DNA of 64,000 bases, taken from contig NC_043023.1 in assembly GCF_006345805.1 (NCBI RefSeq), positions 7,316,001 to 7,380,000 on the forward strand. The letters run 5' to 3'. Source of the stretch: Octopus sinensis (taxonomy: Eukaryota). The translations under genes were made by a program, and so were the position numbers. The notes below the pieces were generated by a model that saw nothing but the letters and a program-made list of their open reading frames with translations, did no database searches and had not been told where the DNA came from. Positions 7,911 to 59,300 of this stretch are shown here, piece after piece (within the stretch, counting starts at the first letter, position 1; every line of letters starts with the position of its first letter).

Positions 7911-7961
7911 CGCACCCAAGTTGCACCCAAAAAGTGTAAAGAAGCAACCAGTTCCCTTTAC
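7911..7961 (+). mobile_element. LTR-related terminus homologous to the solo LTR in the satellite
   Basis: GCACCCAAGTTGCACCCAAAAAGTGTAAAGAAGCAACCAGTTCCCTTTACG is the near-exact reverse complement of the first ~50 bp of the inserts at 30966 and later. Confidence 0.7.
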
Positions 7962-28994: not shown

Positions 28995-29180
28995 ATACTA
29001 AGCAATAGGGTTCAGCAACGAATTGCCTTACCACATACCGAATTTAGAAATAGCAGTCAAGGTTATAGCTATTTCTTCTACTAAAAAGTTAGTAGAAGAA
29101 ATAGCTATAACCCTTTGACTGCTATTTCTAAATTCGGTATGTGTAAGGCAATTCGTTGCTAAACCCTTATTGCTTAGTAT
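28995..29180. repeat. 186-bp near-perfect palindrome (~90-bp arms, AAAG loop)
   Basis: ATACTAAGCAAT...CTTCTACTAA-aaag-TTAGTAGAAG...ATTGCTTAGTAT, with about 5 arm differences. Confidence 0.95.
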
Positions 29181-30965
29181 TACTTAAATTTTCCTCGAAT
29201 GAGGCTTTTACATGCCGAAGACTACTTGGTGTATTGATAATTATTCCAAATTAATTAATTTCACCTTCATTATTATGTATGTATATATATATAATATATG
29301 TATATAATATATATATATATATATATCTTATATATATATATATATTATATATATATATAGCGTTATTAAATCTCAGAACGAGATGTAAATAGTAATCGCT
29401 CAACAATGTAACGTATTATTGCCATCCCATCCATTATTCAGACATAGTATATCTAATGTATAGTGGTTAATATCAGGGCTATAGTTGTTGTTTAGCCCCA
29501 GGTCAGTTATAACCCAGACAGACCTATGATCAAAGACATTCCAGCCGTGTCCATCCCATCCATTATTCAGACATAGTATATCTAATGTATAGTGGTTAAT
29601 ATCAGTGGCTATAGTTGTTGTTTAGCCCCAGGTCAGTTATAACCCAGACAGACCTATGATCAAAGACATTCCAGCCGTGTCCATCCCATCCATTATTCAG
29701 ACATAGTATATCTAATGTATAGTGGTTAATATCAGTGGCTATAGTGGTTGTTTAACCCCAGGTCAGTCCTAACCCAGACAGACCTATGATCAAAGACATT
29801 CCAGCCGTGACCATCCCATCCATTATTCAGACATAGTATATCTAATGTACAGTGGTTAATATTAGTGGCTATAGTTGTTGTTTGGCCCCAGGTCAGTCAT
29901 AATCAAGACAGGCCTATGATCAAAGACATTCCAGCCGTGACCATCCCATCCATTATTCAGACATAGTATATCTAATGTATAGTGGTTAATATTAGTGGCT
30001 ATAGTTGTTGTTTCGCCCCAGGTCAATCATAATCAAGAAAGGCCTATGATCAACGACATTCCAGCCGTGACCATCCCATCCGTTATTCAGACATAGTATA
30101 TCTAATGTATAGTGGTTAATATTAGTGGCTATAGTTGTTGTTTAGCCCCAGGTCAATCCCAACCCAGACAGACCTATGATCAAAAACATTCCAGCCGTGA
30201 CCATGCCATCAATTATTCGGACATAGTATATATAATGTACAGTGGTTAATATTAGTGGCTATAGTTGTTGTTTAGCCCCAGGTCAGTCCTAACCCAGACA
30301 AACCTATGATCAAAGACATTCCAGCCGTGACCATCACATCAATTATTCAGACATAGTATATCTAATGTATAGTGGTTAATATTAGTGGCTATAGTTGTTG
30401 TTTAGCCCCAGGTTAGTCCTGATCACGACAGGCCTATGATCAAAGACATTCCAGCCGTGACCATCCATCCATTATTCAGACATAGTATATCTAATGTATA
30501 GTGGTTAATATTAGTGGCTATAGTTGTTGTTTGTCCCCAGGTCAGTCATAATCAAGACAGGCCTATGATCAAAGACATTCCAGCCGTGACCATCCCATCC
30601 ATTATTCAGACATAGTATATCTAATGTATAGTGGTTAATATTAGTGGCTATAGTTGTTGTTTGTCCCCAGGTCAGTCATAATCAAGACAGGCCTATGATC
30701 AAAGACATTCCAGCCGTGACCACCCCATCCGTTATTCAGACATAGTATGTCTAATGAATAGTGGTTAATATTAGTGGCTATAGTCGTTGTTTGGCCCCAG
30801 GTCAATCCCCCCAGACAGACCTATGATCAAAAACATTCCAGCCGTGACCATCCCATCCATTATTCAGACATAGTATATCTAATGTACAGTGGTTAATATC
30901 AGTGGCTATAGTTGTTGTTTAGCCCCAGGTCAGTCCTAACCCAGACAGACCTATGATCAAAGACA

Positions 30966-31423
30966 TGTAAAGGGAACTGGTTGCTTCTTTACACTTTTGG
31001 CGTGCAACTTGGGTGCAACACAATTTCCTTTCTTTTTGTTTCTAGAAACTACCAGTCAGGAACGAAAAGCAAGTTTAAAAATGCATATAATACTTTATTT
31101 TCTTGGTTCAACAATGAAACAGGATGGTATGTTTTTATCCACCTGGTTCTAAGCAGCAAGGCTGAATTCAAACGTTTGTAAGCTTTACAACAATTCAGCA
31201 GCAGTGGAACAGGCTTCTGGAACAGGTTTCAAAATATATGTCCTTTGGCTTCTATCGCTGTGACTCATTCTTCAGTCTCTAGCGCATGTGCATGAGGAAA
31301 CTTCTTATGCCTTTCCAGAAGGTTCCATAGGCTGATCACACGCACACTGAAGAAGGACGTTCTGCACACGCACACTGAAGAATGACGTTGCGTGTGCGCA
31401 CACTGGAAAATGACGTCACTACA
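30966..31423 (-). mobile_element. Solo LTR 1 (458 bp, short form)
   Basis: GACA|TGTAAAGGG...CACTACA|GACA. Empty monomers read AAAGACATTCC. Minus strand has AATAAA ~130 nt from the end. Confidence 0.85.
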
Positions 31424-33114
31424 GACATTCCAGCCGTGACCATCCCATCCATTATTCAGAAATAGTATATCAAAGGTATAGTGATTAATATTAGTGGCTG
31501 TAGTTGTTGTTTAGCCACAGGTCAGTCCTAACCCAGACAGACCTATGATCAAAGACATTCCAGCCGTGACCATCCCATCCACTATTCAGACATAGTAACT
31601 CTAATGTATAGTGGTTAATATTAGTGGCTATAGTTGTTGTTTAGCCCCAGGTCAGTCCTAACCCAGACAGAACTATGATCAAAGACATTCCAGCCGTGAC
31701 CATCCCATCCACTATTCAGACAGTATCTCTAATGTATAGTGGTTATATTAGTGGCTATAGTTGTTATTTAGCCCCAGGTCTGTCCCAACCCAGACAGACC
31801 TATGATCAAAGGCATTCCAGCCTTGACCATCCCATCCATTATTCAGACATATTATATCTAATGTATAGTGGTTAATATTAGTGGCTATAGTTGTTGTTGT
31901 CGTCCAGGTCAATCATAATCAAGACAGGCCTATGATCAACGACATTCCAGCCGTGACCATCCCATCCGTTATTCAGACATAGTATATCTAATGTATAGTG
32001 GTTAATATTAGTGGCTATAGTTGTTGTTTAGCCCCAGGTCAGTCCTAACCCAGACAGACCTATGATCAAAGACATTCCAGCCGTGACCATCCCATCCACT
32101 ATTCAGACATAGTATCTCTAATGTATAGTGGTTAATATTAGTGGCTATAGTTGTTATTTAGCCCCAGGTCTGTCCCAACCCAGACAGACCTATGATCAAA
32201 GGCATTCCAGCCTTGACCATCCCATCCATTATTCAGACATAGTATATCTAATGTATAGTGGTTAATATTAGTGGCTATAGTTGTTGTTTCGCCCCAGGTC
32301 AATCATAATCAAGACAGGCCTATGATCAACGACATTCCAGCCGTGACCATCCCATCCGTTATTCAGACATAGTATATCTAATGTATAGTGGTTAATATTA
32401 GTGGCTATAGTTGTTGTTTAGCCCCAGGTCAATCCCAACCCAGACAGACCTATGATCAAAAACATTCCAGCCGTGACCATGCCATCAATTATTCAGACAT
32501 AGTATATCTAATGTACAGGGGTTAATATTAGTGGCTATAGTTGTTGTTTAGCCCCAGGTCAGTCCCAACCCAGACAAACCTATGATCAAAGACATTCCAG
32601 CCGTGACCATCCCATCAATTATTCAGATATAGTGTATCTAAAGTATAGTGGTTAATATTAGTGGCTATAGTTGTTGTTTAGCCCCAGGTTAGTCCTAATC
32701 ACGACAGGCCTATGATCAAAGACATTCCAGCCGTGACCATCCCATCGATTATTCAGACATAGTATATCTAATGTATAGTGGTTAATATTAGTGGCTATAG
32801 TTGTTGTTTGGCCCCAGGTCAGTCATAATCAAGACAGGCCTATGATCAAAGACATTCCAGCCGTGACCACCCCATCCATTATTCAGACATAGTATATCTC
32901 ATGAATAGTGGTTAATATTAGTGGCTATAGTTGTTGTTTAGCCCCAGGTCAGTCCTAACCCAGACAGACCTATGATCAAAGACATTCCAGCCGTGACCAT
33001 CCCATCCATTATTCAGACATAGTATATCTAATGTACAGTGGTTAATATTAGTGGCTATAGTTGTTGTTTGGCCCCAGGTCAGTCATAATCAAGACAGGCC
33101 TATGATCAAAGACA

Positions 33115-33567
33115 TGTAAGGGAACTGGTTGCTTCTTTACACTTTTGGCGTGCAACTTGGTGCAACACAATTTCCTTTCTTTTTGTTTCTAGAAACTACC
33201 AGTCAGGAACGAAAAGCAAGTTTAAAAATACATATAATACTTTATTTTCTTGGTCAACAATGAAACACGATGGTATGTTTTTATCCACCTGGTTCTAAGC
33301 AGCAAGGCTGAATTCAAACGTTTGTAAGCTTTACAACAATTCAGCAGCAGTGGAACAGGCTTCTGGAACAGGTTTCAAAATATATGTCCTTGGCTTCTAT
33401 TGCTGTGACTCATTCTTCAGTCTCTAGCGCATGTGCATGAGGAAACTTCTTATGCCTTTCCAGAAGGTTCCATAGGCTGATCACACGCACACTGAGAAGG
33501 ACGTTCTGCACACGCACACTGAAGAATGACGTTGCGTGTGCGCGCACTGGAATATGACGTCACTACA
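33115..33567 (-). mobile_element. Solo LTR 2 (short form)
   Basis: Same termini and GACA duplication. Confidence 0.85.
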
Positions 33568-34090
33568 GACATTCCAGCCGTGACCATCCCATCCATTATT
33601 CAGAAATAGTATATCAAAGGTATAGTGATTAATATTAGTGGCTGTAGTTGTTGTTTAGCCACAGGTCAGTCCTAACCCAGACAGACCTATGATCAAGACA
33701 TTCCAGCCGTGACCATCCCATCCACTATTCAGACATAGTATCTCTAATGTATAGTGGTTAATATTAGTGGCTATAGTTGTTGTTTAGCCCCAGGTCAGTC
33801 CTAACCCAGACAGAACTATGATCAAAGACATTCCAGCCGTGACCATCCCATCCACTATTCAGACATAGTATCTCTAATGTATAGTGGTTAATATTAGTGG
33901 CTATAGTTGTTGTTTAGCCCCAGGTCAGTCCTAACCCAGACAGACCTATGATCAAAGACATTCCAGCCGTGACCATCCCATCCATTATTCAGACATAGTA
34001 TATCTAATGTACAGTGGTTAATATTAGTGGCTATAGTTGTTGTTTGGCCCCAGGTCAGTCATAATCAAGACAGGCCTATGATCAAAGACA

Positions 34091-34552
34091 TGTAAAGGGA
34101 ACTGGTTGCTTCTTTACACTTTTGGCGTGCAACTTGGGTGCAACACAATTTCCTCCTTTCTTTTTGTTCTCTAGAAACTACCAGTCAGGAACGAAAAGCA
34201 AGTTTAAAAATACATATAATACTTTATTTTCTTGGTTCAACAATGAAACACGATGGTATGTTTTTATCCACCTGGTTCTAAGCAGCAAGGCTGAATTCAA
34301 ACGTTTGTAAGCTTTACAACAATTCAGCAGCAGTGGAACAGGCTTCTGGAACAGGTTTCAAAATATATGTCCTTTGGCTTCTATTGCTGTGACTCATTCT
34401 TCAGTCTCTAGCGCATGTGCATGAGGAAACTTCTTATGCCTTTCCAGAAGGTTCCATAGGCTGATCACACGCACACTGAAGAAGGACGTTCTGCACACGC
34501 ACACTGAAGAATGACGTTGCGTGTGCGCGCACTGGAATATGACGTCACTACA
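34091..34552 (-). mobile_element. Solo LTR 3 (short form)
   Basis: Same termini and GACA duplication. Confidence 0.85.
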
Positions 34553-36236
34553 GACATTCCAGCCGTGACCATCCCATCCATTATTCAGAAATAGTATATC
34601 AAAGGTATAGTGATTAATATTAGTGGCTGTAGTTGTTGTTTAGCCACAGGTCAGTCCTAACCCAGACAGACTATGATCAAAGACATTCCAGCCGTGACCA
34701 TCCCACTATTCAGACATAGTATCTCTAATTGTAGTGGTTAATATTAGTGGCTATAGTTGTTGTTTAGCCCCAGGTCAGTCCTAACCCAGACAGAACTATG
34801 ATCAAAGACATTCCAGCCGTGACCATCCCATCCACTATTCAGACATAGTATCTCTAATGTATAGTGGTTATATTAGTGGCTATAGTTGTTATTTAGCCCC
34901 AGGTCTGTCCCAACCCAGACAGACCTATGATCAAAGGCATTCCAGCCTTGACCATCCATCCATTATTCAGACAGATTATATCTAATGTATAGTGGTTAAT
35001 ATTAGTGGCTATAGTTGTTGTTTCGTCCCAGGTCAATCATAATCAAGACAGGCCTATGATCAACGACATTCCAGCCGTGACCATCCCATCCGTTATTCAG
35101 ACATAGTATATCTAATGTATAGTGGTTAATATTAGTGGCTATAGTTGTTGTTTAGCCCCAGGTCAGTCCTAACCCAGACAGACCTATGATCAAAGACATT
35201 CCAGCCGTGACCATCCCATCCACTATTCAGACATAGTATCTCTAATGTATAGTGGTTAATATTAGTGGCTATAGTTGTTATTTAGCCCCAGGTCTGTCCC
35301 AACCCAGACAGACCTATGATCAAAGGCATTCCAGCCTTGACCATCCCATCCATTATTCAGACATAGTATATCTAACTGTATAGTGGTTAATATTAGTGGC
35401 TATAGTTGTTGTTTCGCCCCAGGTCAATCATAATCAAGACAGGCCTATGATCAACGACATTCCAGCCGTGACCATCCCATCCGTTATTCAGACATAGTAT
35501 ATCTAATGTATAGTGGTTAATATTAGTGGCTATAGTTGTTGTTTAGCCCCAGGTCAATCCCAACCCAGACAGACCTATGATCAAAAACATTCCAGCCGTG
35601 ACCATGCCATCAATTATTCAGACATAGTATATCTAATGTACAGGGGTTAATATTAGTGGCTATAGTTGTTGTTTAGCCCCAGGTCAGTCCCAACCCAGAC
35701 AAACCTATGATCAAAGACATTCCAGCCGTGACCATCCCATCAATTATTCAGATATAGTATATCTAAAGTATAGTGGTTAATATTAGTGGCTATAGTTGTT
35801 GTTTAGCCCCAGGTTAGTCCTAATCACGACAGGCCTATGATCAAAGACATTCCAGCCGTGACCATCCCATCGATTATTCAGACATAGTATATCTAATGTA
35901 TAGTGGTTAATATTAGTGGCTATAGTTGTTGTTTGGCCCCAGGTCAGTCATAATCAGACAGGCCTATGATCAAAGACATTCCAGCCGTGGACCACCCCAT
36001 CCATTATTCAGACATAGTAATCTCATGAATAGTGGTTAATATTAGTGGCTATAGTTGTTGTTTAGCCCCAGGTCAGTCCTAACCCAGACAGCCTATGATC
36101 AAAGACATCCAGCCGTGACCATCCCATCCATTATTCAGACATAGTATATCTAATGTACAGTGGTTAATATTAGTGGCTATAGTTGTTGTTTGGCCCCAGG
36201 TCAGTCATAATCAAGACAGGCCTATGATCAAAGACA

Positions 36237-36785
36237 TGTAAAGGGAACTGGTTGCTTCTTTACACTTTTGGCGTGCACTTGGGGGCAACACAATTTCCTT
36301 TCTTTTTGTTTCTAGAAACTACCAGTCAGGAACGAAAAGCAAGTTTAAAAATACATATAATACTTTATTTTCTTGGTTCAACAATGAAACACGATGGTAT
36401 GTTTTTATCCACCTGGTTCTAAGCAGCAAGGCTGAATTCAAACGTTTGTAAGCTTTACAACAATTCAGCAGCAGTGGAACAGGCTTCTGGAACAGGTTTC
36501 AAAATATATGTCCTTTGCTTCTATGGCTGTGACTCAGTTGTAAGCTTTACAACAATTCAGCAGCAGTGGAACAGGCTTCTGGAACAGGTTTCAAAATATA
36601 TGTCCTTTGGCTTCTATTGCTGTGACTCATTCTTCAGTCTCTAGCGCATGTGCATGAGGAAACTTCTTATGCCTTTCCAGAAGGTTCCATAGGCTGATCA
36701 CACGCACACTGAAGAAGGACGTTCTGCACACGCACACTGAAGAATGACGTTGCGTGTGCGCACACTGGAATATGACGTCACTACA
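36237..36785 (-). mobile_element. Solo LTR 4 (long form, internal ~93-bp duplication)
   Basis: Same termini; GTAAGCTTTACAAC...GTGACTCA is present twice. Confidence 0.85.
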
Positions 36786-38472
36786 GACATTCCAGCCGTG
36801 ACCATCCCATCCATTATTCAGAAATAGTATATCAAAGGTATAGTGATTAATATTAGTGGCTGTAGTTGTTGTTTAGCCACAGGTCAGTCCTAACCCAGAC
36901 AGACCTATGATCAAAGACATTCCAGCCGTGACCATCCCATCCACTATTCAGACATAGTATCTCTAATGTATAGTGGTTAATATTAGTGGCTATAGTTGTT
37001 GTTTAGCCCCAGGTCAGTCCTAACCCAGACAGAACTATGATCAAAGACATTCCAGCCGTGACCATCCCATCCACTATTCAGACATAGTATCTCTAATGTA
37101 TAGTGGTTAATATTAGTGGCTATAGTTGTTATTTAGCCCCAGGTCTGTCCCAACCCAGACAGACCTATGATCAAAGGCATTCCAGCCTTGACCATCCCAT
37201 CCATTATTCAGACATATTATATCTAATGTATAGTGGTTAATATTAGTGGCTATAGTTGTTGTTTCGTCCCAGGTCAATCATAATCAAGACAGGCCTATGA
37301 TCAACGACATTCCAGCGGTGACCATCCCATCCGTTATTCAGACATAGTATATCTAATGTATAGTGGTTAATATTAGTGGCTATAGTTGTTGTTTAGCCCC
37401 AGGTCAGTCCTAACCCAGACAGACCTATGATCAAAGACATCCAGCCGTGACCATCCCATCCACTATTCAGACATAGTATCTCTAATGTATAGTGGTTAAT
37501 ATTAGTGGCTATAGTTGTTATTTAGCCCCAGGTCTGTCCCAACCCAGACAGACCTATGATCAAAGGCATTCCAGCCTTGACCATACCCATCCATTATTCA
37601 GACATAGTATATCTAATGTTAGTGTTAATATTAGTGGCTATAGTTGTTGTTTCGCCCCAGGTCAATCATAATCAAGACAGGCCTATGATCAACGACATTC
37701 CGCCGTGACCATCCCATCCGTTATTCAGACATAGTATATCTAATGTAGTGGTTAATATTAGTGCTATAGTTGTTGTTTAGCCCCAGGTCAATCCCAACCC
37801 AGACAGACCTATGATCAAAAACATTCCAGCCGTGACCATGCCATCAATTATTCAGACATAGTATATCTAATGTACAGGGGTTAATATTAGTGGCTATAGT
37901 TGTTGTTTAGCCCCAGGTCAGTCCCAACCCAGACAAACCTATGATCAAAGACATTCCAGCCGTGACCATCCCATCATTATTCAGATATAGTATATCTAAA
38001 GTATAGTGGTTAATATTAGTGGCTATAGTTGTTGTTTAGCCCCAGGTTAGTCCTAATCACGACAGGCCTATGATCAAAGAACATTCCAGCCGTGACCATC
38101 CCATCGATTATTCAGACATAGTATATCTAATGTATAGTGGTTATATTAGTGGCTATAGTTGTTGTTTGGCCCCAGGTCAGTCATAATCAAGACAGGCCTA
38201 TGATCAAAGACATTCCAGCCGTGACCACCCCATCCATTATTCAGACATAGTATATCTCATGAATAGTGGTTAATATTAGTGGCTATAGTTGTTGTTTAGC
38301 CCCAGGTCAGTCCTAACCCAGACAGACCTATGATCAAAGACATTCCAGCCGTGACCATCCCATCCATTATTCAGACATAGTATATCTAATGTACAGTGGT
38401 TAATATTAGTGGCTATAGTTGTTGTTTGGCCCCAGGTCAGTCATAATCAAGACAGGCCTATGATCAAAGACA

Positions 38473-39080
38473 TGTAAAGGGAACTGGTTGCTTCTTTACA
38501 CTTTTGGCGTGCAACTTGGGTGCAACACAATTTCCTTTCTTTTTGTTTCTAGAAACTACCAGTCAGGAACGAAAAGCAAGTTTAAAAATACATATAATAC
38601 TTTATTTTCTTGGTTCAACAAGAAACACGATGGTGTATGTTTTTCCATCCACCTGGTTCTAAGCAGCAAGGCTGAATTCAAACGTTTGTAAGCTTTACAA
38701 CAATTCAGCAGCAGTGGAACAGGCTTCTGGAACAGGTTTCAAAATATATGTCCTTTGGCTTCTATGGCTGTGACTCAGTTGTAAGCTTTACAACACATTC
38801 AGCAGCAGTGGAACAGGCTTCTGGAACAGGTTTCAAAATATATGTCCTTTGGCTTCTATTGCTGTGACTCATTCTTCATCTCTACTCCGCGCATGTGCAT
38901 GAGGAAACTTCTTATGCCTTTCCAGAAGGTTTCCATATGGTGATCACACGCACAGTGAGAGAAGGTGTTATCACACGCACACTACTGAAGAATGCGTGCG
39001 TTGCGCACACTGGAATATGCACGCACACTGACACATAAGAATGACCATCCCTCACATGCGAGGCTGGAAGTATGACGTCA
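38473..39080 (-). mobile_element. Solo LTR 5 (long form; right end scrambled)
   Basis: Clear start. Sequence after ~38880 is garbled, so the end coordinate is approximate. Confidence 0.7.
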
Positions 39081-40812
39081 TCGATAGTTGACACATTAGT
39101 CAAGTAACCTAGACAGACCTATGATTATATCACGTGACCTATGTATCAGAATAAGTATAGGTGGCTAGAGGTTTAGTTGTTGTAGGCCACAGGTCAGTCC
39201 TAACCCAGACAGACCTATGATCAAAGACATTCCAGCCGTGACCATCCCATCCACTATTCAGACATAGTATCTCTAATATATTTATAATTAGTGGTTAATA
39301 TTAGTGGCTTGTTTTTTAGCCCCAGGTCAGTCCTAACCCAGACAGAACTATGATCAAGACATTCCAGCCGTGACCATCCCATCCACTACACATATCATAT
39401 CTCTAATGTATAGTGGTTAATATTAGTGGCTATAGTTGTTATTTAGCCCCAGGTCTGTCCCAACCATACAGACCTATGATCAAAGGCATTCCAGCCTTGA
39501 CCATCCCATCCATTATTCAGACATATTATATCTAATGTATAGTGGTTAATATTAGTGGCTATAGGTTGTTTTGTCCCAGGTCAATCATAATCAGACAGGC
39601 CTATGATCAACGACATTCCAGCCGTGACCATCCCATCCGTTATTCAGACATAGTATATCTAATGTATATGTGGTTAATATTAGTGGCTATAGTTGTTGTT
39701 TTTTAGCCCCAGGTCAGTCCTAACCCAGACAGACCTATGATCAAAGACATTCCAGCCGTGACCATCCCATCCACTATTCAGACATAGTATCTCTAATGTA
39801 TAGTGGTTAATATTAGTGGCTATAGTTGTTATTTAGCCCCAGGTCTGTCCCAACCCAGACAGACCTATGATCAAAGGCATTCCAGCCTTGACCATCCCAC
39901 CTTTCATTAGACAGACTAGATATCTAATGTATAGTGGTTTAATATTAGTGGCTATAGTTTTTGTTTCGCCCCAGGTCAATCATAATCAACGACCCTATGA
40001 TCAACGACATTCGACATTCCACACCGTGACCATCCCATCCGTTATTCAGACATAGTATCTATAATGTATAGTGGTTAATATTTGTGGCTATAGTTGTTGT
40101 TTAGCACCAGGTCAATCCCACCCAGACAGACCTATGATCAAAAACATTCCAGCCACCTGACCATGCCATCAATTATTCAGACATAGTATATCTAATGTAC
40201 AGGGGTTAATATTAGTGGCTATAGTTGTTGTTTAGCCCCAGGTCAGTCCCAACCCAGACAAACCTATGATCAAAAACATTCCAGCCGTGACCATCCCATC
40301 AATTATTCAGATAATAGTATAGTTATCTAAAGTATAGTGGTTTAATATTAGTGGCTATAGTTGTGTTGTTTAGCCCCAGGTTAGTCCTAATACACGACAG
40401 CCTATGATCAAAGACATTCCAGCCGTGACCATCCCATCGATTCATCAGATTATATCATAGTAATATCTATGTATAGTGGTTAGGTATTTAGTGGCTATTG
40501 TTGTTGTTTGGCCCCAGGTCAGTCATAATCAAGACAGGCCTATGATCAAAGACATTCCAGCCGCCGTGACCACCCCATCCATTATTCAGACATAGTATAT
40601 CTCATGAATAGTGGTTAATATTGTGGCTATAGTTGTTGTTTAGCCCCAGGTCAGTCCTAACCAGACAGAACTATGATCAAAGACATTCCAGCCGTGACCA
40701 TCCCATCCATTATTCAGACATAGTATATCTAATGTACAGTGGTTAATATTAGTGGCTATGTTTGTTTGGCCCCAGGTCATTCATAATCAAGACAGGGCTA
40801 TGATCAAAGACA

Positions 40813-41362
40813 TGTAAGGGAACTGGTTGCTTCTTTACACTTTTGGCGTGCAACTTGGGTGCAACACAATTTCCTTTCTTTTGTTTCTAGAAACTACCAG
40901 TCAGGAACGAAAAGCAAGTTTAAAAACATATAATACTTTATTTTCTTGGTTCAACAATGAAACAGGATGGTATGTTTTTATCCACCACCTGGTTCTAAGC
41001 AGCAAGGCTGAATTCAAACGTTTGTAAGCTTTACAACAATTCAGGCAGCAGTGGAACAGGCTTCTGGAAACAGTTTCAAAATATATGTCCTTTGGCTTCT
41101 ATGGCTGTGACCAGTTGTAAGCTTTACAACAATTCAGCAGCAGTGGAACAGGCTTCTGGAACAGGTTTCAAAATATATGTCCTTTGGCTTCTATTGCTGT
41201 GACTCATTCTTCAGTCTCTAGCGCATGTGCATGAGGAAACTTCTTATGCCTTTCCAGAAGGTTCCATAGGCTGATCACACGCACACTGAAGAAGGACGTT
41301 CTGCACACGCACACTGAAGAATGACGTTGCGTGTGCGCACACTGGAAAATGACGTCACTACA
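40813..41362 (-). mobile_element. Solo LTR 6 (long form)
   Basis: Same termini and GACA duplication. Confidence 0.85.
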
Positions 41363-42534
41363 GACATTCCAGCCGTGACCATCCCATCCATTATTCAGAA
41401 ATAGTATATCAAAGGTATAGTGATTAATATTAGTGGCTATAGTTGTTGTTTAGCCCCAGGTCAGTCCTAACCCAGACAGAACTATGATCAAAGACATTCC
41501 AGCCGTGACCATCCCATCCACTATTCAGACATAGTATCTCTAATGTATAGTGGTTAATATTAGTGGCTATAGTTGTTATTTAGCCCCAGGTCTGTCCCAA
41601 CCAAGACAGACCTATGATCAAAGGCATTCCAGCCTTGACCATCCCATCCATTATTCAGACATATTATATCTAATGTATAGTGGTTAATATTAGTGGCTAT
41701 AGTTGTTGTTTCGTCCCAGGTCAATCATAATCAAGACAGGCCTATGATCAACGACATTCCAGCCGTGACCATCCCATCCGTTATTCAGACATAGTATATC
41801 TAATGTATAGTGGTTAATATTAGTGGCTATAGTTGTTGTTTAGCCCCAGGTCAGTCCTAACCCAGACAGACATATGATCAAAGACATTCCAGCCGTGACC
41901 ATCCCATCCACTATTCAGACATAGTATCTCTAATGTATAGTGGTTAATATTAGTGGCTATAGTTGTTATTTAGCCCCAGGTCTGTCCCAACCCAGACAGA
42001 CCTATGATCAAAGGCATTCCAGCCTTGACCATCCCATCCATTATTCAGACATAGTATATCTAATGTATAGTGGTTAATATTAGTGGCTATAGTTGTTGTT
42101 TGTCCCCAGGTCAGTCATAATCAAGACAGGCCTATGATCAAAGACATTCCAGCCGTGACCATCCCATCCATTATTCAGACATAGTATATCTAATGTATAG
42201 TGGTTAATATTAGTGGCTATAGTTGTTGTTTGTCCCAGGTCAGTCCATAATCAAGACAGGCCTATGATCAAAGACTTCCAGCCGTGACCACCCCATCCGT
42301 TATTCAGACATAGTAATCTAAATGATAGTGGTTAATATTAGTGGCTATAGTCGTTGTTTGGCCCCAGGTCAATCCCAACCCAGACAGACCTATGATCAAA
42401 AACATTCCAGCCGTGACCATCCCATCCAATATTCAGACATAGTATATCTAATGTACAGTGGTTAATATCAGTGGCTATAGTTGTTGTTTAGCCCCAGGTC
42501 AGTCCTAACCCAGACAGACCTATGATCAAAGACA

Positions 42535-42978
42535 TGTAAAGGGAACTGGTTGCTTCTTTACACTTTTGGCGTGCAACTTGGGTGCAACACAATTCCTTTC
42601 TTTTTGTTTCTAGAAACTACAGTCAGGACACGAAGCAAGTTAAAAATGCATAATACTTTATTTTCTTGGTTCAACAATGAAACACGATGGTATGTTTTTA
42701 TCCACCCTGGTCTAAGCAGCAAGCTGAATCAAACGTTTGTAAGCTTTACACAATTCAGCAGCAGTGGAACAGGCTTCTGGAACAGGTTTCAATATATGTC
42801 CTTGGCTTCTATCGCTGTGACTCATTCTTCAGTCTCTAGCGCATGTGCATGAGGAACTTCTTATGCCTTTCCAGAAGGTTCCCTAGGCTGATCACACGCA
42901 CACTGAAGAAGGAAGTTCTGCACAAGCACACTGAAGAATGACGTGCGGTGCGCACACTGGAAAAATGACGTCACTACA
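42535..42978 (-). mobile_element. Solo LTR 7 (short form, shares variants with LTR 1)
   Basis: Same termini; carries the AAATGCA and CTATCGCTG variants seen in LTR 1. Confidence 0.85.
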
Positions 42979-44663
42979 GACATTCCTTCCAGCCGTGACC
43001 ATCCCATCCATTATTCAGAAATAGTATATCAAGGTATAGTGATTAATATTAGTGGCTGTAGTTGTTGTTTAGCACAGGTCAGTCCTAACCCAGACAGACC
43101 TATGATCAAAGACATTCCAGCCGTGACCATCCCATCCACTATTCAGACATAGTATCTCTAATGTATAGTGGTTAATATTAGTGGCTATAGTTGTTGTTTA
43201 GCCCCAGGTCAGTCCAACCCAGACAGAACTATGATCAAAGACATTCCAGCCGTGACCATCCCATCCACTATTCAGACATAGTATCTCTAATGTAGTGGTA
43301 ATATTAGTGGCTATAGTTGTTATTTAGCCCCAGGTCTGTCCCAACCCAGACAGACCTATGATCAAAGGCATTCCAGCCTTGACCATCCCATCCATTATTC
43401 AGACATATTATATCTAATGTATAGTGGTTAATATTAGTGGCTATAGTTGTTGTTTAGTCCCAGGTCAATCATAATAAGACAGGCCTATGATCAACGACAT
43501 TCCAGCCGTGACCATCCCATCCGTTATTCAGACTAGTATATCTAATGTATAGTGGTTAATATTAGTGGCTATAGTTGGTTAGCCCCAGGTCGTCCTAACC
43601 CAGACAGACCTATGATCAAAGACATTCCAGCCGTGACCATCCCATCCACTATTCAGACATAGTATCTCTATGTATAGTGGTTAATATTAGTGGCTATAGT
43701 TGTTATTTAGCCCCAGGTCTGTCCCAACCCAGACAGACCTATGATCAAAGGCATTCCAGCCTTGACCATCCCATCCATTATTCAGACATAGTATATCTAA
43801 TGTATAGTGGTTAATATAAGTGGCTATAGTTGTTGTTTCGCCCCAGGTCAATCATAATCAAGACAGGCCTATGATCAACGACATTCCAGCCGTGACCATC
43901 CCATCCGTTATTCAGACATAGTATATCTAATGTATAGTGGTTAATATTAGTGGCTATAGTTGTTGTTTAGCCCCAGGTCAATCCCAACCCAGACAGACCT
44001 ATGATCAAAAACATTCCAGCCGTGACCATGCCATCAATTATTCAGACATAGTATATCTACTGTACAGGGGTTAATATTAGTGGCTATAGTTGTTGTTTAG
44101 CCCCAGGTCAGTCCTAACCCAGACAAACCTATGTTCAAAGACATTCCAGCCGTGACCATCCCATCAATTATTCAGACATAGTATATCTAATGTATAGTGG
44201 TTAATATTAGTGGCTATAGTTGTTGTTTAGCCCCAGGTTAGTCCTGATCACGACAGGCCTATGATCAAAGACATTCCAGCCGTGACCATCCCATCCATTA
44301 TTCAGACATAGTATATCTAATGTATAGTGGTTAATATTAGTGGCTATAGTTGTTGTTTGTCCCCAGGTCAGTCATAATCAAGACAGGCCTATGATCAAAG
44401 ACATTCCAGCCGTGACCACCCCATCCATTATTCAGACATAGTATATCTCATGAATTGTGGTTAATATTAGTGGCTATAGTTGTTGTTTAGCCCCAGGTCA
44501 GTCCTAACCCAGAGAGACCTATGATCAAAGACATTCCAGCCGTGACCATCCCATCCATTATTCAGACATAGTATATCTAATGTACAGTGGTTAATATTAG
44601 TGGCTATAGTTGTTGTTTGGCCCCAGGTCAGTCATAATCAAGACAGGCCTATGATCAAAGACA

Positions 44664-45213
44664 TGTAAAGGGAACTGGTTGCTTCTTTACACTTTTGGCG
44701 TGCAACTTGGGTGCAACACAATTTCCTTTCTTTTTGTTTCTAGAAACTACCAGTCAGGAACGAAAAGCAAGTTTAAAAATACATATAATACTTTATTTTC
44801 TTGGTTCAACAATGAAACACCATGGTATGTTTTTATCCACCTGGTTCTAAGCAGCAAGGCTGAATTCAAACGTTTGTAAGCTTTACAACAATTCAGCAGC
44901 AGTGGAACAGGCTTCTGGAACAGGTTTCAAAATATATGTCCTTTGGCTTCTATGGCTGTGACTCAGTTGTAAGCTTTACAACAATTCAGCAGCAGTGGAA
45001 CAGGCTTCTGGAACAGGTTTCAAAATATATGTCCTTTGGCTTCTATTGCTGTGACTCATTCTTCAGTCTCTAGCGCATGTGCATGAGGAAACTTCTTATG
45101 CCTTTCCAGAAGGTTCCATAGGCTGATCACACGCACACTGAAGAAGGACGTTCTGCACACGCACACTGAAGAATGACGTGCGTGTGCGCACACTGGAATA
45201 TGACGTCACTACC
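44664..45213 (-). mobile_element. Solo LTR 8 (long form)
   Basis: Same start; the end reads CACTACC|GACA. Confidence 0.85.
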
Positions 45214-46888
45214 GACATTCCAGCCGTGACCATCCCATCCATTATTCAGAAATAGTATATCAAGGTATAGTGGTTAATATTAGTGGCTGTAGTGTTGTTT
45301 AGCCACAGGTCAGTCCTAACCCAGACAGACCTATGATCAAAGAATTCCAGCCGTGACCATCCCATCCACTATTCAGACATAGTATCTCTATGTATAGTGG
45401 TTAATATTAGTGGCTATAGTTGTTGTTTAGCCCCAGGTCAGTCCTAACCCAGACAGACTATGATCAAAGACATTCCAGCCGTGACCATCCCATCCACTAT
45501 TCAGACATAGTATCTCTAATGTATAGTGTTAATATTAGTGGCTATAGTTGTTATTTAGCCCCAGGTCTGTCCCAACCCAGACAGACCTATGATCAAAGGC
45601 ATTCCAGCCTTGACCATCCCATCCATTATTCAGACATATTATATCTAATGTATAGTGGTTAATATTAGTGGCTATAGTTGTTGTTTCGTCCCAGGTCAAT
45701 CATAATCAAGACAGGCCTATGATCAACGACATTCCAGCCGTGACCATCCCATCCGTTATTCAGACATAGTATATCTAATGTATAGTGGTTAATATTAGTG
45801 GCTATAGTTGTTGTTTAGCCCCAGGTCAGTCCTAACCCAGACAGACCTATGATCAAAGACATTCCAGCCGTGACCATCCCATCCACTATTCAGACATAGT
45901 ATCTCTAATGTATAGTGGTTAATATTAGTGGCTATAGTTGTATTAGCCCCAGGTCTGTCCCAACCCAGACAGACCTATGATCAAAGGCATTCCAGCCTTG
46001 ACCATCCCATCCATTATTCAGACATAGTATATCTAATGTATAGTGGTTAATATTAGTGGCTATAGTTGTTGTTTCGGCCCAGGTCAATCATAATCAAGAC
46101 AGGCCTATGATCAACGACATTCCACCGTGACCATCCATCCGTTATTCAGACATAGTATATCTAATGTATAGTGGTTAATATTAGTGGCTATAGTTGTTGT
46201 TTAGCACCAGGTCAATCCAAACCCAGACAGACCTATGATCAAAAACATTCCAGCCGTGACCATGCATCAATTATTCAGACATAGTATATCTAATGTACAG
46301 GGTTAATATTAGTGGCTATAGTTGTTGTTTAGCCCCAGGTCAGTCCCAACCCAGACAAACCTATGATCAAAGACATTCCAGCCGTGACCATCCCATCCAT
46401 TATTCAGATATAGTATATCTAAAGTATAGTGGTTAATATTAGTGGCTATAGTTGTTGTTTAGCCCCAGGTTAGTCCTAATCACGACAGGCCTATGATCAA
46501 AGACATTCCAGCCGTGACCATCCCATCGATTATTCAGACATAGTATCTAATGTATAGTGGTTAATATTAGTGGGCTATAGTTGTTGTTTGGCCCAGGTCA
46601 GTCATAATCAAGACAGGCCTATGATCAAAGACATTCCAGCCGTGACCACCCCATCCATTATTCAGACATAGTATATCTCATGAATAGTGGTTAATATAGT
46701 GGCTATAGTTGTTGTTTAGCCCTAGGTCAGTCCTAACCCAGACAGACCTATGATCAAAGACATTCCAGCCGTGACCATCCCATCCATTATTCAGACATAG
46801 TATATCTAATGTACAGTGGTTATATTAGTGGCTATAGTTGTTGTTTGGCCCAGGTCAGTCAAATCAGACAGGACCTATGATCAAAGAA

Positions 46889-47422
46889 TGTAAAGGGAAC
46901 TGGTTGCTTCTTTACACTTTTGGCGTGCAACTTGGGTGCAACACAATTTCTTTCTTTTGTTCTAGAAACTACCAGTCAGGAACGAAAGCAAGTTTAAAAA
47001 TACATATAATACTTTATTTTCTTGTTCAACAATGAAACAGGATGGTATGTTTTATCCACCTGGTTCTAAGCACAAGGCTGAATTCAAACGTTTGTAAGCT
47101 TTACAACAATTCAGCAGCAGTGGAACAGGCTTCTGGAACGGTTTCAAAATATATGCCTTGGGCTTCTATGGCTGTGACTCATGTAAGCTTTACAACACTT
47201 CAGCAGCGTGGAACAGGCTTCTGGAACAGGTTTCAAAATATATGTCCTTGGCTTCTATTGCTGTGACTCATACTTCAGTCTCTAGCGCATGTGCATGAGG
47301 AAACTTCTTAGCCTTTCGAAGGTTCCATAGGCTGATCACACGCACACTGAAGAAGGACGTTCTGCACACGCACATGAAGATGACGTTGCGTGTGCGCACC
47401 CACTGGAAAATGACGTACTACA
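46889..47422 (-). mobile_element. Solo LTR 9 (long form, many small deletions)
   Basis: Homologous termini; the left target duplication reads GAA. Confidence 0.8.
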
Positions 47423-48844
47423 GACATTCCAGCCGTGACCATCCCATCCAATTATTCAGAAATAGTATATCAAGGTATAGGATTAATATTAGTGGCTATA
47501 GTGTTGTTTAGCCCCAGGTCAGTCCTAACCCAGACAGAACTATGATCAAAGACATTCCAGCCGTGACCATCCCATCCACTATTCAGACATAGTATCTCTA
47601 ATGTATAGTGGTTAATATAGTGGCTATAGTTGTTATTTAGCCCCAGGTCTGTCCCAACCCAGACAGACCTATGATCAAAGGCATTCCAGCCTTGACCATC
47701 CCATCCATTATTCAGACATATTAATCTAATGTATAGTGGTTAATATTAGTGGCTATAGTTGTTGTTCGTCCAGGTCAATCATAATCAAGACAGGCCTATG
47801 ATCAACGACATTCCAGCCGTGACCACCCATCCGTTATTCAGACATAGTATATCTAATGTATAGTGGTTAATATTAGTGGCTATAGTTGTTTTTAGCCCCA
47901 GGTCAGTCCTAACCCAGACAGACATATGATCAAAGACATTCCAGCCGTGACCATCCCATCCACTATTCAGACATAGTATCTCTAATGTATAGTGGTTAAT
48001 ATTAGTGGCTATAGTGTTATTTAGCCCCAGGTCTGTCCCAACACAGACAGACCTATGATCAAAGGCATTCCAGCATTGACCATCCAATCCATTATTCAGA
48101 CATAGATATCTAATGTATAGTGGTTATATTAGGTCATAGTTGTTGTGTTTCGCCCCAGGTCATCATAATCAAGACAGGCCTATGATCAACGACTCCAGCC
48201 GTTGACATCCAATCAGTTATTCAGACATAGTATATCTAATGTATAGTGGTTAATATTAGTGGCTATAGTTGTTTTTTAGCCCCAGGTCAATCCCAACCCA
48301 GACAGACCTATGATCAAAAACATTCCAGCCGTGTGACCATGCCATCAATTATTCAGACATAGTATAATCTAATGTACAGGGGTTAATATTATTGTGGCTA
48401 TAGTGTTGTTTAGCACCAGGTCAGTCCCAACCCAGGACAAACCTATGAATCAAAGACATTCCAGCCCGTGACCATCCCATCAATTATTCAGATATAGTAT
48501 ATCTAAAGTATAGTGGTTAATATTAGTGGCTATAGTTGTTGTTTAGCCCCAGGTTCGTCCTAATCACGACAGGCCTATGATCAAAGGAATTCCAGCCGTG
48601 ACCATCCCATCGATTATTCAGACATAGTATATCTAAGTAGTGGTTAATATTAGTGGCTATAGTTGTTGTTTGGCCCCAGGTCATTCATACCCAGACAGGC
48701 CTATGATCAAAGACATTCCAGCCGTGACCACCCCATCCATTATTCAGACATAGTATATCTCATGAACAGTGGTTAATATTAGTGGCTATAGTTGTTGTTT
48801 AGCCCCAGGTCAGTCCTAACCCAGACAGACCTATGATCAAAGAC

Positions 48845-48944
48845 NNNNNNNNNNNNNNNNNNNNNNNNNNNNNNNNNNNNNNNNNNNNNNNNNNNNNNNN
48901 NNNNNNNNNNNNNNNNNNNNNNNNNNNNNNNNNNNNNNNNNNNN
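48845..48944. other. Assembly gap (100 N)
   Basis: Run of exactly 100 Ns. Confidence 1.
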
Positions 48945-56356: not shown

Positions 56357-59300
56357 ATATATATACTAGTTGAAGGTGACCCGCTCTTCGCACGGGTAAG
56401 AGTGTGGTTGTTACTTTCTGTTGCTTCCTTTCAGCATGTAAAAAGCATCATCCGAACGTGGCGGATTGCAGCGCCACCGTGACTGGCTTCTGTGCTGGTG
56501 GCACGTAAAAAGCACCAACCGATCGTGGCCGCTGCCAGTTCCCCTGGCACCTGTGCCGGTGGCACGGAAAAAGCACCCACTACGCTCACAGAGTGGTTGG
56601 CATTAGGAAGGTCATCCACCTGTAGAAACACTGCCAGATCAGACTGGAGCCTGGTGCAGCCTCCTGGCTTCCGAGACCCCGGTCACACTGCCCAACCCGT
56701 GCTAGCACGGAAAACGGACGTTAAATGATGATGATGATGATGATTCTCCTTCTTTGTTTCTCTCTCACTTTCCCACTCTCTTACTCTTCCTTTCTCTCGG
56801 ACTCTCCCTCGCTTTCTCTTACTCTCTATCTTTATCTATCTCTCTCCCATTTATAAACAACAGAAGATCTTGAGTAAGTTGAGAAATAAAATATTTAGAA
56901 AGATCAATCAGAAATATGAGGCAGTGGCAATGGAAAGGTCTGCTTCAAGGCAGACAGCAAAACGCTAACATTTAAAAGGACAGACGAACTTGCGAGCTGA
57001 ATAAAAATAATAAAATATTGGAAACCAAAGTTTGAAGGGATAGAATGTGAGGATAGTAGAGTCACCATGGCTGGCATTTGTTAACGACGGACAGCAACGT
57101 AGTGACAGTTTAACGGCTGGCGTAAAATTTTGAACTTGATGTAAAAGAAAATTCGTAAACACCAAGTTTTGAAGTGATTCTTTCTCACGACAGAAGACTC
57201 AAGATGGGAAGCATTCAAAACTTCTTCATCATGGACGGCAACACATTGACGATTAAAAGGCTGGCACAAATTTTTTAGCTTGATGTAACAGAGAATTGCT
57301 AAACACCCGCTCCTTTAAATTTTAATCCCCTTCCAGCCCCATTTATACCCCTTTTCACATTTTGGTTAATATAACCCGATTTCATTTGGGTCTACTGGGG
57401 CCACATTTTATAAGATGAGGACTCAAGCAAGTTTCCTGAGTTCTGGTCATAGACCATAGAACACTCAACCAAGTTTCCCGAGTTCTGGTCATAGACCATA
57501 GAACACTCAACCAAGTTTCCCGAGTTCTGGTCATAGACCATAGAACACTCAACCAAGTTTCCCGAGTTCTGGTCATAGACCATAGAACAGTGAAGCAAGT
57601 TTCCCGAGTTCTGGTCATAGACCATAGAACACTCAACCAAGTTTCTCGTGTTCTGGTCATATACCATAGAACAGTCAAGCAAGTTTCCCGAGTTCTGGTC
57701 ATAGACCATAGAACACTCAACCAAGTTTCCCGAGTTCTGGTCATGGAGCATAGAATACTTAGCTAAAATCTAGTTTCTACCTAGTCTGAACCAATCAATC
57801 CACCGCAGTCTTCATCCACACAGAGCTTACTCAACCATGTTCCAGTTCCAGCGACAGACGACCAGACCATCCAGTCATGTTCCTGCTCCAGCCAATGACA
57901 ACGCTAACATACACCAGCAACGCCACCGACGCCTTCATCTCAACGTCGCCATCACCATCGTCGTCCTTCACCTTCACGTCGTCTCCATCTCCGTCGACTT
58001 CATCTCCAGCAACACTAATATGTACATAGCACTCATTCAGGTTTAGCTTTCACGCTGTTATGATTTTCACCGAGGTTAACAGCACAGCACTACCTGCGAG
58101 ATCTTCTGTACCAATGTAACCTGGCACAGCATTGAAGCCAAAACCGCTACACGACATGTGTTCAACCGGCATCTGCACTTGTGATCCGAACATCCTGTTA
58201 CAGAACGAACTGCTATTATGTACTTTACTACGAACTGGTAAATTAACTCCATCTTGTCTGAAATACCCTGAGAGACTTTTCCTATGCGCTGTATTTTGTT
58301 TTGCCCGCATACACCTTGTTTGTACTTCTGTCGCACATAGTTAATACACACACAAATGCTATCTCTGTCACATTCATACGCAACACATGCCTTTCTCGCT
58401 TGTTTTCCATGCTCAATATGCCCTTGTAAACGCAACACATCTCTGTAAGACCCTAGGTCGTTCACGCATACATAGAGAAAGTTGTTTGTCCCTTACAACG
58501 CGCCAGCATGCCACACTTTTGTTCCTGCACGGCCGAGGCATATAATAGCTCAAGCATTGGCTGGCAGCCTCAGCCTTACTGCATTAATCACTGGCATATT
58601 CAATACTGTACACTGTATTTCAGCCTAGCAAGCCCTATTGCACTCATGCACCTCTCTTCTGCACGTGTTGCAACACTTCTGCGTCAGCTCACTTCTTCTC
58701 CCGACTCAAAGCACGTCGGATGTTCACATGCGCTGCGCTCATGTTTAGGCATAATTTCCCCCTGTTAGACCCCTGTTGGTTACGTAATTAACAGAGAAAA
58801 TTATCTGTCTCGCACCCAAGTTGCACCCAAAAAGTGTAAAGAAGCAACCAGTTCCCTTTACGTAACTATCAAAAAGTATTAAAAAGTTTAATATACATAA
58901 ATACAGATATATACACTTTGTATATATACATATTTATATATAGAACACACACACACACATATATAAACGCTCGTTGGTGTGTTCTGTTTCTATTTGGTCG
59001 ATGGGCGCGTTGACAGGTAGACAATAGAAGGCGATGGCGATGGAATATTTGTTTCTCTGTATGAATGCAGACAGATACATGAGTAAAAGTTATGGGAAGC
59101 TAAGAGATAGAGTGAGTGAAAATGTTCTTACTATAATAACGGGAGTGGAAATCTCAAAGTTATATATGAAGGAGAGTGAGAGGGGAATGTAGGAAATAGC
59201 GTGAGTGAGGAAGATAGGGTTTTCTAAGGTAGCCCACGGGCATCGTCTCCTCATTCTACATGTCCCTGTAAATTTTGGAGCGAATCGGACGGGACGTAGT

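What the first reader, a model, noticed from the sequence alone, without database searches (positions are those of the whole stretch)
29422..48844. Satellite higher-order repeat built from 13 x 130-bp monomers plus one solo LTR
A single retrotransposon insertion (TG...CA ends, GACA duplication at the monomer's GACA), apparently reduced to a solo LTR, was then amplified with its flanking monomers. The same junction occurs 9 times, and 458 + 13 x 130 = 2148 matches the observed 2146-2149 spacing. The result is a regularly spaced set of co-oriented promoter and poly(A) cassettes in a satellite. This could drive satellite transcription (centromeric or heterochromatic RNA, piRNA precursors). It is the most system-like structure in the window; function is inference.
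Basis: partly seen in the sequence, partly recalled or inferred. Interest (0 to 1): 0.82.

Follow-up and report, generated by a model that had tools for sequence, protein, structure and literature searches.

The report
Octopus satellite repeat carrying an amplified LTR-like insert
A 19-kb stretch of 130-bp satellite DNA from an octopus genome is built of larger ~2.15-2.24-kb units, each with 13 monomers plus one copy of a single old mobile-element insertion that looks like a solo LTR; this is a real but ordinary kind of repeat architecture, and no function is shown.

Summary
Window 29422-48844 is a 130-bp satellite interrupted nine times by the same insert at the same monomer position. The array has a true higher-order repeat (HOR): monomers at the same position in different units are 97.8% identical, against 91.1% for different positions.

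- The insert has a short form (444-462 bp, 4 copies) and a long form (534-550 bp, with one degenerate copy of about 618 bp). The long form carries an internal 92-bp tandem duplication.
- Unit lengths are 2129-2340 bp, plus two truncated units of 976 and 1722 bp.
- The array ends in a 100-N assembly gap.

The insert has mobile-element hallmarks: TGTA...TACA ends, a target duplication of 4 bp (GACA, up to 6 bp depending on register), and exact restoration of the monomer when it is removed. Its terminal 56 bp recur once elsewhere in the window, starting one base in from the terminus.

"Solo LTR" is the best reading but is unproven. I found no full-length parent, no paired LTRs and no second complete copy in the window, in 300 kb of Octopus vulgaris DNA, or in the viral, metagenome and protein collections.

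The promoter/poly(A) idea rests only on short motifs on the minus strand. Transcription, piRNA or centromere roles could not be tested. This is a new member of a known kind.

The parts
29422..48844 (+). 130-bp satellite array (about 113 monomers) with nine copies of one insert; bounded on the right by an assembly gap
   Evidence: TRF; monomer BLAST
30966..31423 (-). Insert copy 1, short form (458 bp): TGTAAAGG...CACTACA flanked by GACA/GACA. The minus strand is the putative functional orientation
33115..33567 (-). Insert copy 2, short form (453 bp)
34091..34552 (-). Insert copy 3, short form (462 bp)
36237..36785 (-). Insert copy 4, long form (549 bp), with a 92-bp internal tandem duplication at 36446-36629
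38473..39090 (-). Insert copy 5, long form; the right end and the following monomer are degenerate and rich in indels (unit about 6% diverged from the unit consensus)
40813..41362 (-). Insert copy 6, long form (550 bp)
42535..42978 (-). Insert copy 7, short form (444 bp); lacks the EcoRI site
44664..45213 (-). Insert copy 8, long form (550 bp)
46889..47422 (-). Insert copy 9, long form (534 bp)
31423..33109 (+). Reference block of 13 monomers (HOR positions 1-13). The same positional order recurs at 34552-36231, 36785-38467, 42982-44658 and 45213-46884
33567..34085 (+). Truncated block of 4 monomers: positions 1 and 2, one 2-like monomer, and position 13 (internal deletion or unequal exchange)
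41362..42529 (+). Variant block of 9 monomers. It ends in three diverged monomers that also end the first block (29405-30960), defining a second HOR subtype with a different left-flank monomer
31337..31416 (+). 28-bp repeat x2.9 inside the insert (ACGT-core, CRE-like); the perfect CRE TGACGTCA follows at 31411-31418, six bases in from the insert's + strand 3' end
48845..48944 (.). 100-N assembly gap that ends the assembled array
7906..7961 (-). The only similarity to the insert outside the array: 56 bp at 93% identity to the insert's + strand 5' end, starting one base in from the terminus. Duplicated at 58806-58861

Best explanation
Proposed history of the locus (the window is from an octopus, Octopus vulgaris or a close relative):
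1. A mobile element integrated once into a monomer of a 130-bp satellite at ...AAAGACA|TTCC..., duplicating GACA. The element is most probably an LTR retrotransposon. Either LTR-LTR recombination reduced it to a solo LTR, or only the LTR survives.
2. Unequal exchange or segmental tandem duplication, in a register of 13 monomers plus the insert, then copied that composite unit many times. This produced a higher-order repeat of about 2.15 kb.
3. Later events gave the present mosaic: a 92-bp tandem duplication inside the insert (units of about 2.24 kb), internal deletions (units with 4 and 9 monomers), and conversion of the monomer to the left of the insert (two left-flank types).

Shown: steps 2 and 3, and that the insert is a single integration with a target-site duplication. 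Inferred: the LTR identity. The structure is best seen as a by-product of satellite turnover. Any promoter activity of the insert is conjecture.
For: HOR:
- Same-position monomers are 97.8% identical across units, against 91.1% for different positions. The positional order 1-13 recurs in five complete blocks.
- The cleanest whole units (U1, U3, U4) differ from one another by 0.7-0.9% in substitutions and U8 from them by 1.0-1.4%; the noisier U7 and U9p differ by 2.3-4.7% from the other units (unit 5 aside).

Single insertion:
- All nine copies share the same left junction. Eight share the same right junction and the same distinctive position-1 monomer.

Mobile-element hallmarks:
- Termini are TGTA...TACA. 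The direct repeat GACA flanks the insert, and removing the insert plus one repeat restores the consensus AAAGACATTCC.
- Homology to a second locus (7906-7961) begins one base in from the insert terminus and abuts a different repeat.

LTR-like layout on the minus strand: CRE TGACGTCA at position 6, 28-bp repeats, AP-1 site at 157, a TATA-like run at about 183, a single AATAAA at 325, and a 3' CA. The + strand has no poly(A) signal. The size of 458 bp is typical of LTRs (general knowledge).

Not tRNA- or SINE-like: ARAGORN and Rfam find nothing.

Organism: the reverse-transcriptase-like ORF in the window has best hits of 95-96% to Octopus vulgaris proteins.

Precedent: ATHILA elements and solo LTRs copied after integration inside Arabidopsis CEN180 arrays (10.1101/2021.05.30.446350).
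Against: - No full-length element, paired LTRs, primer-binding site or polypurine tract, and no second complete copy of the insert, was found anywhere: the window, 300 kb of O. vulgaris, viral and metagenome contigs, or the protein collection queried with insert ORFs.
- The flanking repeat is AGACAT, so the duplication may be 4-6 bp, and TG...CA exists in only one register.
- Beyond the shared 56 bp, the second locus is unrelated to the insert. The pattern of a shared end with an unrelated body also fits a retroposon 3' tail.
- The left-flank monomer comes in two types that differ up to 14 bp from the insert. Under a single insertion this requires a conversion event ending at the insert boundary.
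- Units 5, 7 and 9 are rich in indels and the array ends in a gap, so copy number and some variants may be assembly noise.
Confidence: 0.6

Rival explanations
1. The insert is a mobile element but not an LTR. It would be a 5'-truncated non-LTR retroposon or a SINE-like element whose 3' end, in minus orientation, is ...CCAGTTCCCTTTAC. The TG...CA ends would be coincidental. The HOR amplification story stays the same.
For: - Only the terminal 56 bp is shared with the second locus and the rest is unrelated. Different retroposons that share a LINE-derived 3' tail show this pattern.
- At 7884-7966 the fragment is about 74 bp long and bracketed by the direct repeat TTACGTAA (or GTAA), as a 5'-truncated retroposed copy with its own target duplication would be.
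- From general knowledge, SINEs and LINEs are far more abundant than LTR elements in octopus genomes. The window itself carries fragments resembling reverse transcriptase.
Against: - There is no A-rich or simple-repeat tail at either end, and no tRNA-like, 5S or 7SL head.
- No ORF of the insert resembles any protein.
- The TGTA/TACA terminal inversion plus a 4-bp duplication is the LTR signature.
- The bracket at 7884-7966 partly overlaps the element's own end, and its unambiguous part, GTAA, is expected by chance.
Confidence: 0.22
2. The insert is not a transposable element. It would be a piece of unrelated DNA captured into the array by repair or ectopic recombination at short homology and then amplified. 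Under this reading the composite unit is simply a complex satellite.
For: No second full-length copy was found in any searchable sequence. Only 6 bp of repeat flank it.
Against: - The flanking repeat is a true duplication of the target, since the monomer is restored exactly. Repair capture does not normally produce this.
- Termini are inverted (TGTA/TACA).
- The terminal 56 bp occur at an independent locus, with homology starting one base in from the terminus.
Confidence: 0.07
3. The element targets this satellite site and inserted more than once. The two HOR subtypes, which have different left-flank monomers, would come from independent insertions at the same AGACAT site.
For: There are two left-flank monomer types, differing at about 6 sites, the nearest 14 bp from the insert. 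The two subtype-B inserts share a private substitution.
Against: The right-flank monomer is the same distinctive position-1 variant in both subtypes, and positions 1-7 are shared. Conversion that stops at the heterology boundary explains the left-flank difference more simply.
Confidence: 0.05
4. The regular array is largely an assembly product: a few real units expanded, or haplotypes stitched together, in a noisy long-read assembly.
For: - The array ends in a 100-N gap.
- The 13.4 kb at the start of the window recur at 99.5% identity just after the gap, which could be a false duplication.
- Units 5, 7 and 9 carry many small indels.
Against: Units carry distinct substitutions, two insert forms, two flank types and two truncated forms in a non-periodic order. 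An assembler repeating one unit would not create these.
Confidence: 0.06

Closest known systems
ATHILA elements and solo LTRs duplicated after integration inside Arabidopsis CEN180 satellite arrays (Naish et al., 10.1101/2021.05.30.446350)
   Same: [quoted passage not shown]
   Different: In Arabidopsis there are a few duplicates 8.9-538 kb apart, from a well-defined Gypsy family with full-length members. Here at least 9 regularly spaced copies form the HOR unit itself, in an animal, and the parent family is unidentified.
Drosophila Su(Ste) Y-linked tandem repeats with a hoppel (1360) insertion (PMC7874207)
   Same: A single defective transposon insertion was amplified with every unit of a tandem array and sits in one orientation in each unit.
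   Different: In Su(Ste) the insertion is a DNA transposon in a gene-derived repeat, and it is shown experimentally to start antisense transcripts that become piRNAs. Here there is no expression evidence and the repeat is a non-coding 130-bp satellite.
Classical higher-order repeats of primate alpha satellite
   Same: A multimeric unit of diverged monomers (about 91% identical) is homogenised as a block (about 98% between units). Variant units arise by unequal exchange.
   Different: The unit here includes a non-satellite insert of 458-550 bp. A centromeric location is unknown.
Tandem repeats derived from LTR retrotransposons in plants (for example centromeric CRM-derived repeats in maize and the Sobo satellite of Solanum bulbocastanum; from memory, not checked here)
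   Same: LTR sequence becomes part of a long tandem repeat unit.
   Different: In those cases the repeat unit derives from the retrotransposon itself. Here a pre-existing satellite hosts the LTR-like piece.

Membership tests
Satellite DNA with higher-order repeat (HOR) | Head-to-tail monomers of constant length over a long array | tested here: met
   About 113 monomers of about 130 bp, all on the + strand
Satellite DNA with higher-order repeat (HOR) | Multi-monomer units more alike between units than monomers are within a unit, with conserved positional order | tested here: met
   97.8% for same positions against 91.1% for different positions; order 1-13 recurs in five complete blocks
Solo LTR of an LTR retrotransposon | 5'-TG...CA-3' termini forming a short inverted repeat | tested here: met
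   TGTA...TACA in 8 of 9 copies; this depends on choosing the 4-bp register
Solo LTR of an LTR retrotransposon | 4-6-bp target-site duplication, with the target restored when the insert is removed | tested here: met
   GACA (up to AGACAT) on both sides; the monomer consensus AAAGACATTCC is restored
Solo LTR of an LTR retrotransposon | The same sequence occurs as paired direct repeats around a primer-binding site, gag-pol and a polypurine tract in full-length elements | tested here: inconclusive
   None found in the window, in 300 kb of O. vulgaris, or in viral, metagenome and protein collections. The host genome itself could not be searched as DNA
Solo LTR of an LTR retrotransposon | Dispersed copies at other loci with different target duplications | tested here: inconclusive
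   Only one 56-bp terminal fragment, at 7906-7961
Solo LTR of an LTR retrotransposon | U3-R-U5 organisation with promoter and poly(A) signal | tested here: inconclusive
   Motifs lie in the right order on the minus strand only. Short motifs are not evidence of function
SINE or 5'-truncated non-LTR retroposon | A-rich or simple-repeat 3' tail, or an internal pol III promoter / tRNA-like head | tested here: not met
   No tail at either end; ARAGORN and Rfam find nothing
SINE or 5'-truncated non-LTR retroposon | Copies share the 3' end and differ in 5' truncation | tested here: inconclusive
   One short terminal fragment is compatible with this, but it is a single case
Transcribed satellite, piRNA cluster or centromeric satellite | Transcripts or small RNAs, or CENP-A / H3K9me3 chromatin, on the array | not testable with these tools
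   No expression, chromatin or cytogenetic data are available

The most novel reading that the evidence does not exclude
The LTR-like insert would be an active, co-oriented promoter/terminator module. Repeated every ~2.2 kb, it would turn the octopus satellite into a regularly transcribed array: a long non-coding or piRNA-precursor locus analogous to hoppel in Drosophila Su(Ste). Alternatively, the element family would integrate specifically at this satellite site.
Probability: 0.1. Interest if true: 0.6.

Novelty: new member of a known kind. Interest (0 to 1): 0.3.

Why it matters
The locus is a clean, datable example in a cephalopod of a mobile-element insertion swept up by satellite homogenisation and becoming part of the repeat unit. 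My literature searches found no paper describing octopus satellites, so the 130-bp family and its HOR may be undescribed.

The insert gives a convenient marker for array structure: EcoRI cuts 8 of the 9 insert copies, though also two variant monomers. If the insert proved to be transcriptionally active, the array would offer a natural model of TE-driven satellite transcription outside insects and plants. As it stands it is an ordinary product of repeat turnover.

Tried and rejected
Searches for the insert or monomer elsewhere, all negative:
- Exact-pattern scans of viral contigs, using the insert end and the monomer.
- Exact-pattern scans of metagenome contigs, using two insert patterns.
- Exact look-up of ten window ORFs in the protein collection.
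- A homology search with nine concatenated insert ORF translations. The insert therefore leaves no trace in the gene-called collections.
- Seven O. vulgaris loci (300 kb) fetched through copies of the reverse-transcriptase-like gene: no monomer, insert or 56-bp terminus.

Tests of alternative identities for the insert:
- Sensitive local alignment of the whole insert against 6900-8000 found nothing beyond the 56 bp.
- The 1042-bp direct repeats at 5456-6496 / 8444-9483 were checked as possible LTRs of a host element. Their ends are not TG...CA, so I rejected that.
- I looked for a target duplication plus a TG start that would define a longer LTR ending at 7961. None was convincing.
- Rfam (gathering and E-value modes) and tRNA scans were empty.
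- The terminal hairpin TGTAAAG/CTTTACA is no more stable than in shuffled sequence.
- MITE, Ginger-like and Helitron readings were rejected: the terminal inverted repeat is only 4 bp, and there are no TC...CTRR ends.

Literature searches for octopus or cephalopod satellites found nothing relevant.
Full report
**What is there**

TRF reports a 130-bp tandem array over 29422-48844. BLAST with the consensus monomer gives 115 co-linear + strand hits at 84-99% identity and none elsewhere in the window. The series is interrupted nine times. A 100-N assembly gap at 48845-48944 ends the array, so its true extent is unknown.

**The nine interruptions are one insert**

- Aligning the nine interruptions with 20 bp of flank shows one and the same insert at one and the same monomer position...CCTATGATCAAAGACA | TGTAAAGGGAAC ... 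GACGTCACTACA | GACATTCCAGCC....
- The left junction is letter-perfect in six copies. The other three differ by a 1-bp indel.
- The right junction matches in seven copies with two mismatches or fewer. One more has a 1-bp deletion, and the fifth copy is degenerate.
- Shuffled sequence gives no chance matches for either junction.
- Removing the insert and one GACA restores the monomer consensus AAAGACATTCC exactly.
- Precise copies are 30966-31423, 33115-33567, 34091-34552, 36237-36785, 38473-~39090, 40813-41362, 42535-42978, 44664-45213 and 46889-47422.
- Four copies are short (444-462 bp). Five are long (534-550 bp, about 618 bp for the degenerate fifth) because of a 92-bp tandem duplication inside the insert.

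**Higher-order structure**

- Blocks between inserts hold 12 (partial), 13, 4, 13, 13, 12 plus one degenerate, 9, 13, 13 and at least 11 monomers.
- With the block at 31423-33109 as reference, monomers in the other 13-mer blocks find their best match at the same ordinal position.
- Across five complete blocks, same-position monomers are 97.8% identical against 91.1% for different positions.
- The cleanest whole units (U1, U3, U4) differ from one another by 0.7-0.9% in substitutions, and U8 from them by 1.0-1.4%. Units 7 and 9 differ by 2.3-4.7% from the other units, unit 5 aside. Unit 5 is an outlier at about 7%, with many small indels.
- Unit lengths are 2149, 976, 2146, 2236, 2340, 1722, 2129 and 2226 bp.
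- The 4-monomer block keeps positions 1 and 2, one 2-like monomer, and position 13.
- The 9-monomer block and the first block both end in three diverged monomers and carry short inserts. This defines a second HOR subtype.
- The monomer to the right of the insert is the same distinctive position-1 variant throughout.
- The monomer to the left comes in two types, differing at about six sites, the nearest 14 bp from the insert.
- The simplest account is one insertion, amplification in HOR register, and later unequal exchange and conversion. A conversion tract would naturally stop at the heterology created by the insert.

**What the insert is**

Evidence that it is a mobile element:
- The ends are TGTA...TACA with a 4-bp duplication GACA.
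- The repeated string is actually AGACAT, so the duplication could be read as 4, 5 or 6 bp. TG...CA holds only in the 4-bp register.
- Outside the array, the window holds one similarity to the insert. It is 56 bp at 93% identity at 7961..7906 on the minus strand, recurring at 58861..58806 because of a large duplication. The similarity starts one base in from the insert terminus.
- At that locus the sequence next to the terminus belongs to another repeat that occurs in O. vulgaris without the fragment. The terminus is therefore a genuine element boundary.
- Beyond the 56 bp the two loci are unrelated.

Evidence on the type of element:
- On the minus strand the insert reads, in order: a perfect CRE (TGACGTCA) at position 6, 28-bp repeats, an AP-1 site at 157, a TATA-like run near 183, a single AATAAA at 325, and a terminal CA. 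The + strand has no AATAAA or ATTAAA. This fits a U3-R-U5 layout, but these are short motifs only.
- There is no tRNA-like or other Rfam match, no A-rich tail, and no long terminal inverted repeat.
- The terminal hairpin is not unusually stable.

On these grounds a solo LTR, or an LTR remnant, is the best reading.

**The defining test could not be passed**

Showing the same sequence as paired repeats around a primer-binding site, gag-pol and a polypurine tract was not possible with these tools.
- Nothing was found in the window.
- Nothing was found in viral or metagenome contigs.
- Nothing was found in the protein collections, whether by exact ORFs or by a homology search with concatenated insert ORFs.
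- Nothing was found in 300 kb of O. vulgaris chromosomal sequence fetched around reverse-transcriptase-like genes.

The main rival is a retroposon of another class whose conserved 3' tail is the shared 56 bp. The short fragment at 7884-7966 is bracketed by TTACGTAA/GTAA, as a 5'-truncated retroposed copy might be. That bracket overlaps the element's own end, and its unambiguous 4 bp are expected by chance.

**Organism and surroundings**

- The reverse-transcriptase-like ORF at 15720-17198 has its best hits, at 95-96%, in Octopus vulgaris proteins on chromosome-scale records. TE copies in fetched O. vulgaris loci are 88-96% identical to the window. The window is therefore from O. vulgaris or a close relative.
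- The array lies in a repeat-rich setting. It is preceded by kilobase (AT)n tracts around a 489-bp tandem repeat, and transposon fragments lie on both sides.
- Window 1-13450 recurs at 50900-64000 with 99.5% identity over the first 11.3 kb, starting about 2 kb past the gap that ends the array. This is either a segmental duplication of at least 50.9 kb that includes the array, or a false join.

**Reliability of the assembly**

Several things argue against an array made by an assembler repeating one unit: the distinct substitutions between units, the two insert forms, the two flank types and the two truncated units, all in a non-periodic order. Copy number and the indel-rich units 5, 7 and 9 should not be trusted without reads.

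**Function**

Nothing here bears on transcription, small RNAs, chromatin or chromosomal position. Two documented parallels exist:
- ATHILA elements and solo LTRs copied after integration inside Arabidopsis CEN180 arrays (10.1101/2021.05.30.446350).
- The hoppel insertion amplified with every Su(Ste) unit in Drosophila, which does drive antisense transcription and piRNA production (PMC7874207).

It is not evidence that it applies here.

**Verdict**

The structural observation is correct and well above chance. The amplification history is well supported. The solo-LTR label is probable (about 0.6) but untested at its defining feature. The functional reading is conjecture. This is a new member of a known kind, of modest interest.

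Noticed in passing
window 1-13450 and 50900-64000; gap 48845-48944: The first 13.4 kb of the window recur about 50.9 kb downstream (99.5% over 11.3 kb, then 97.6%), starting about 2 kb after the 100-N gap that ends the satellite. This is either a large tandem segmental duplication containing the array or a false duplication at a scaffold join.
   Followed up: partly
window 9622-10773 and 60509-61717 (+): This pogo/Tigger-type transposase ORF (DDE_1, HTH_Tnp_Tc5, BrkDBD) is 92% identical in protein to a teleost fish Tigger (Fundulus heteroclitus) and 81-89% to many other fish. No octopus protein appears among the best 120 hits. It is a candidate horizontal transfer between fish and cephalopod.
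   Followed up: partly
window 13985-14522 and 18670-19205 (inverted), ORF 15720-17198 (+): 544-bp inverted repeats (95.8%) enclose a 492-aa ORF whose relatives are named reverse-transcriptase-domain proteins. Many copies at 87-96% occur in Octopus vulgaris. Inverted terminal repeats around a reverse transcriptase suggest a Penelope-like element (inference). The ORF has no Pfam hit in the local copy.
   Followed up: partly
window 21717-24299, 24304-26193, 26705-28997: Two (AT)n tracts of 2.6 and 2.3 kb flank a 489-bp tandem repeat (3.8 copies, 94%) just upstream of the satellite.
   Followed up: no
window 29007-29167: A near-perfect foldback with arms of about 78 bp and a 4-nt centre, lying 255 bp before the first monomer. 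It may be a foldback or MITE-like element.
   Followed up: no
window 5456-6496 and 8444-9483; 6521-6859: Direct repeats of 1042 bp (95.9%) lie 3 kb apart, without TG...CA ends. A 42-bp tandem repeat (8 copies) follows the first. The 56-bp fragment related to the insert lies between them.
   Followed up: partly
window 38468-40807: The fifth HOR unit is about 6% diverged from the unit consensus, with 39 indel events and a scrambled insert end. It is either an old copy or a poorly polished stretch of the assembly.
   Followed up: partly
window 29422-48844: CpG observed/expected is 0.19 in the monomer but 0.60 in the insert and 0.68 in the left flank. The satellite is strongly CpG-depleted relative to its insert.
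   Followed up: no
window 48946-49323 (-), 20177-20509 (-), 4127-4656 (+): Open frames that look like retroposon or mariner remnants by eye. Only 20177-20509 gives a weak RVT_1 hit (E = 0.02, below the cut-off); the others have no Pfam hit.
   Followed up: partly
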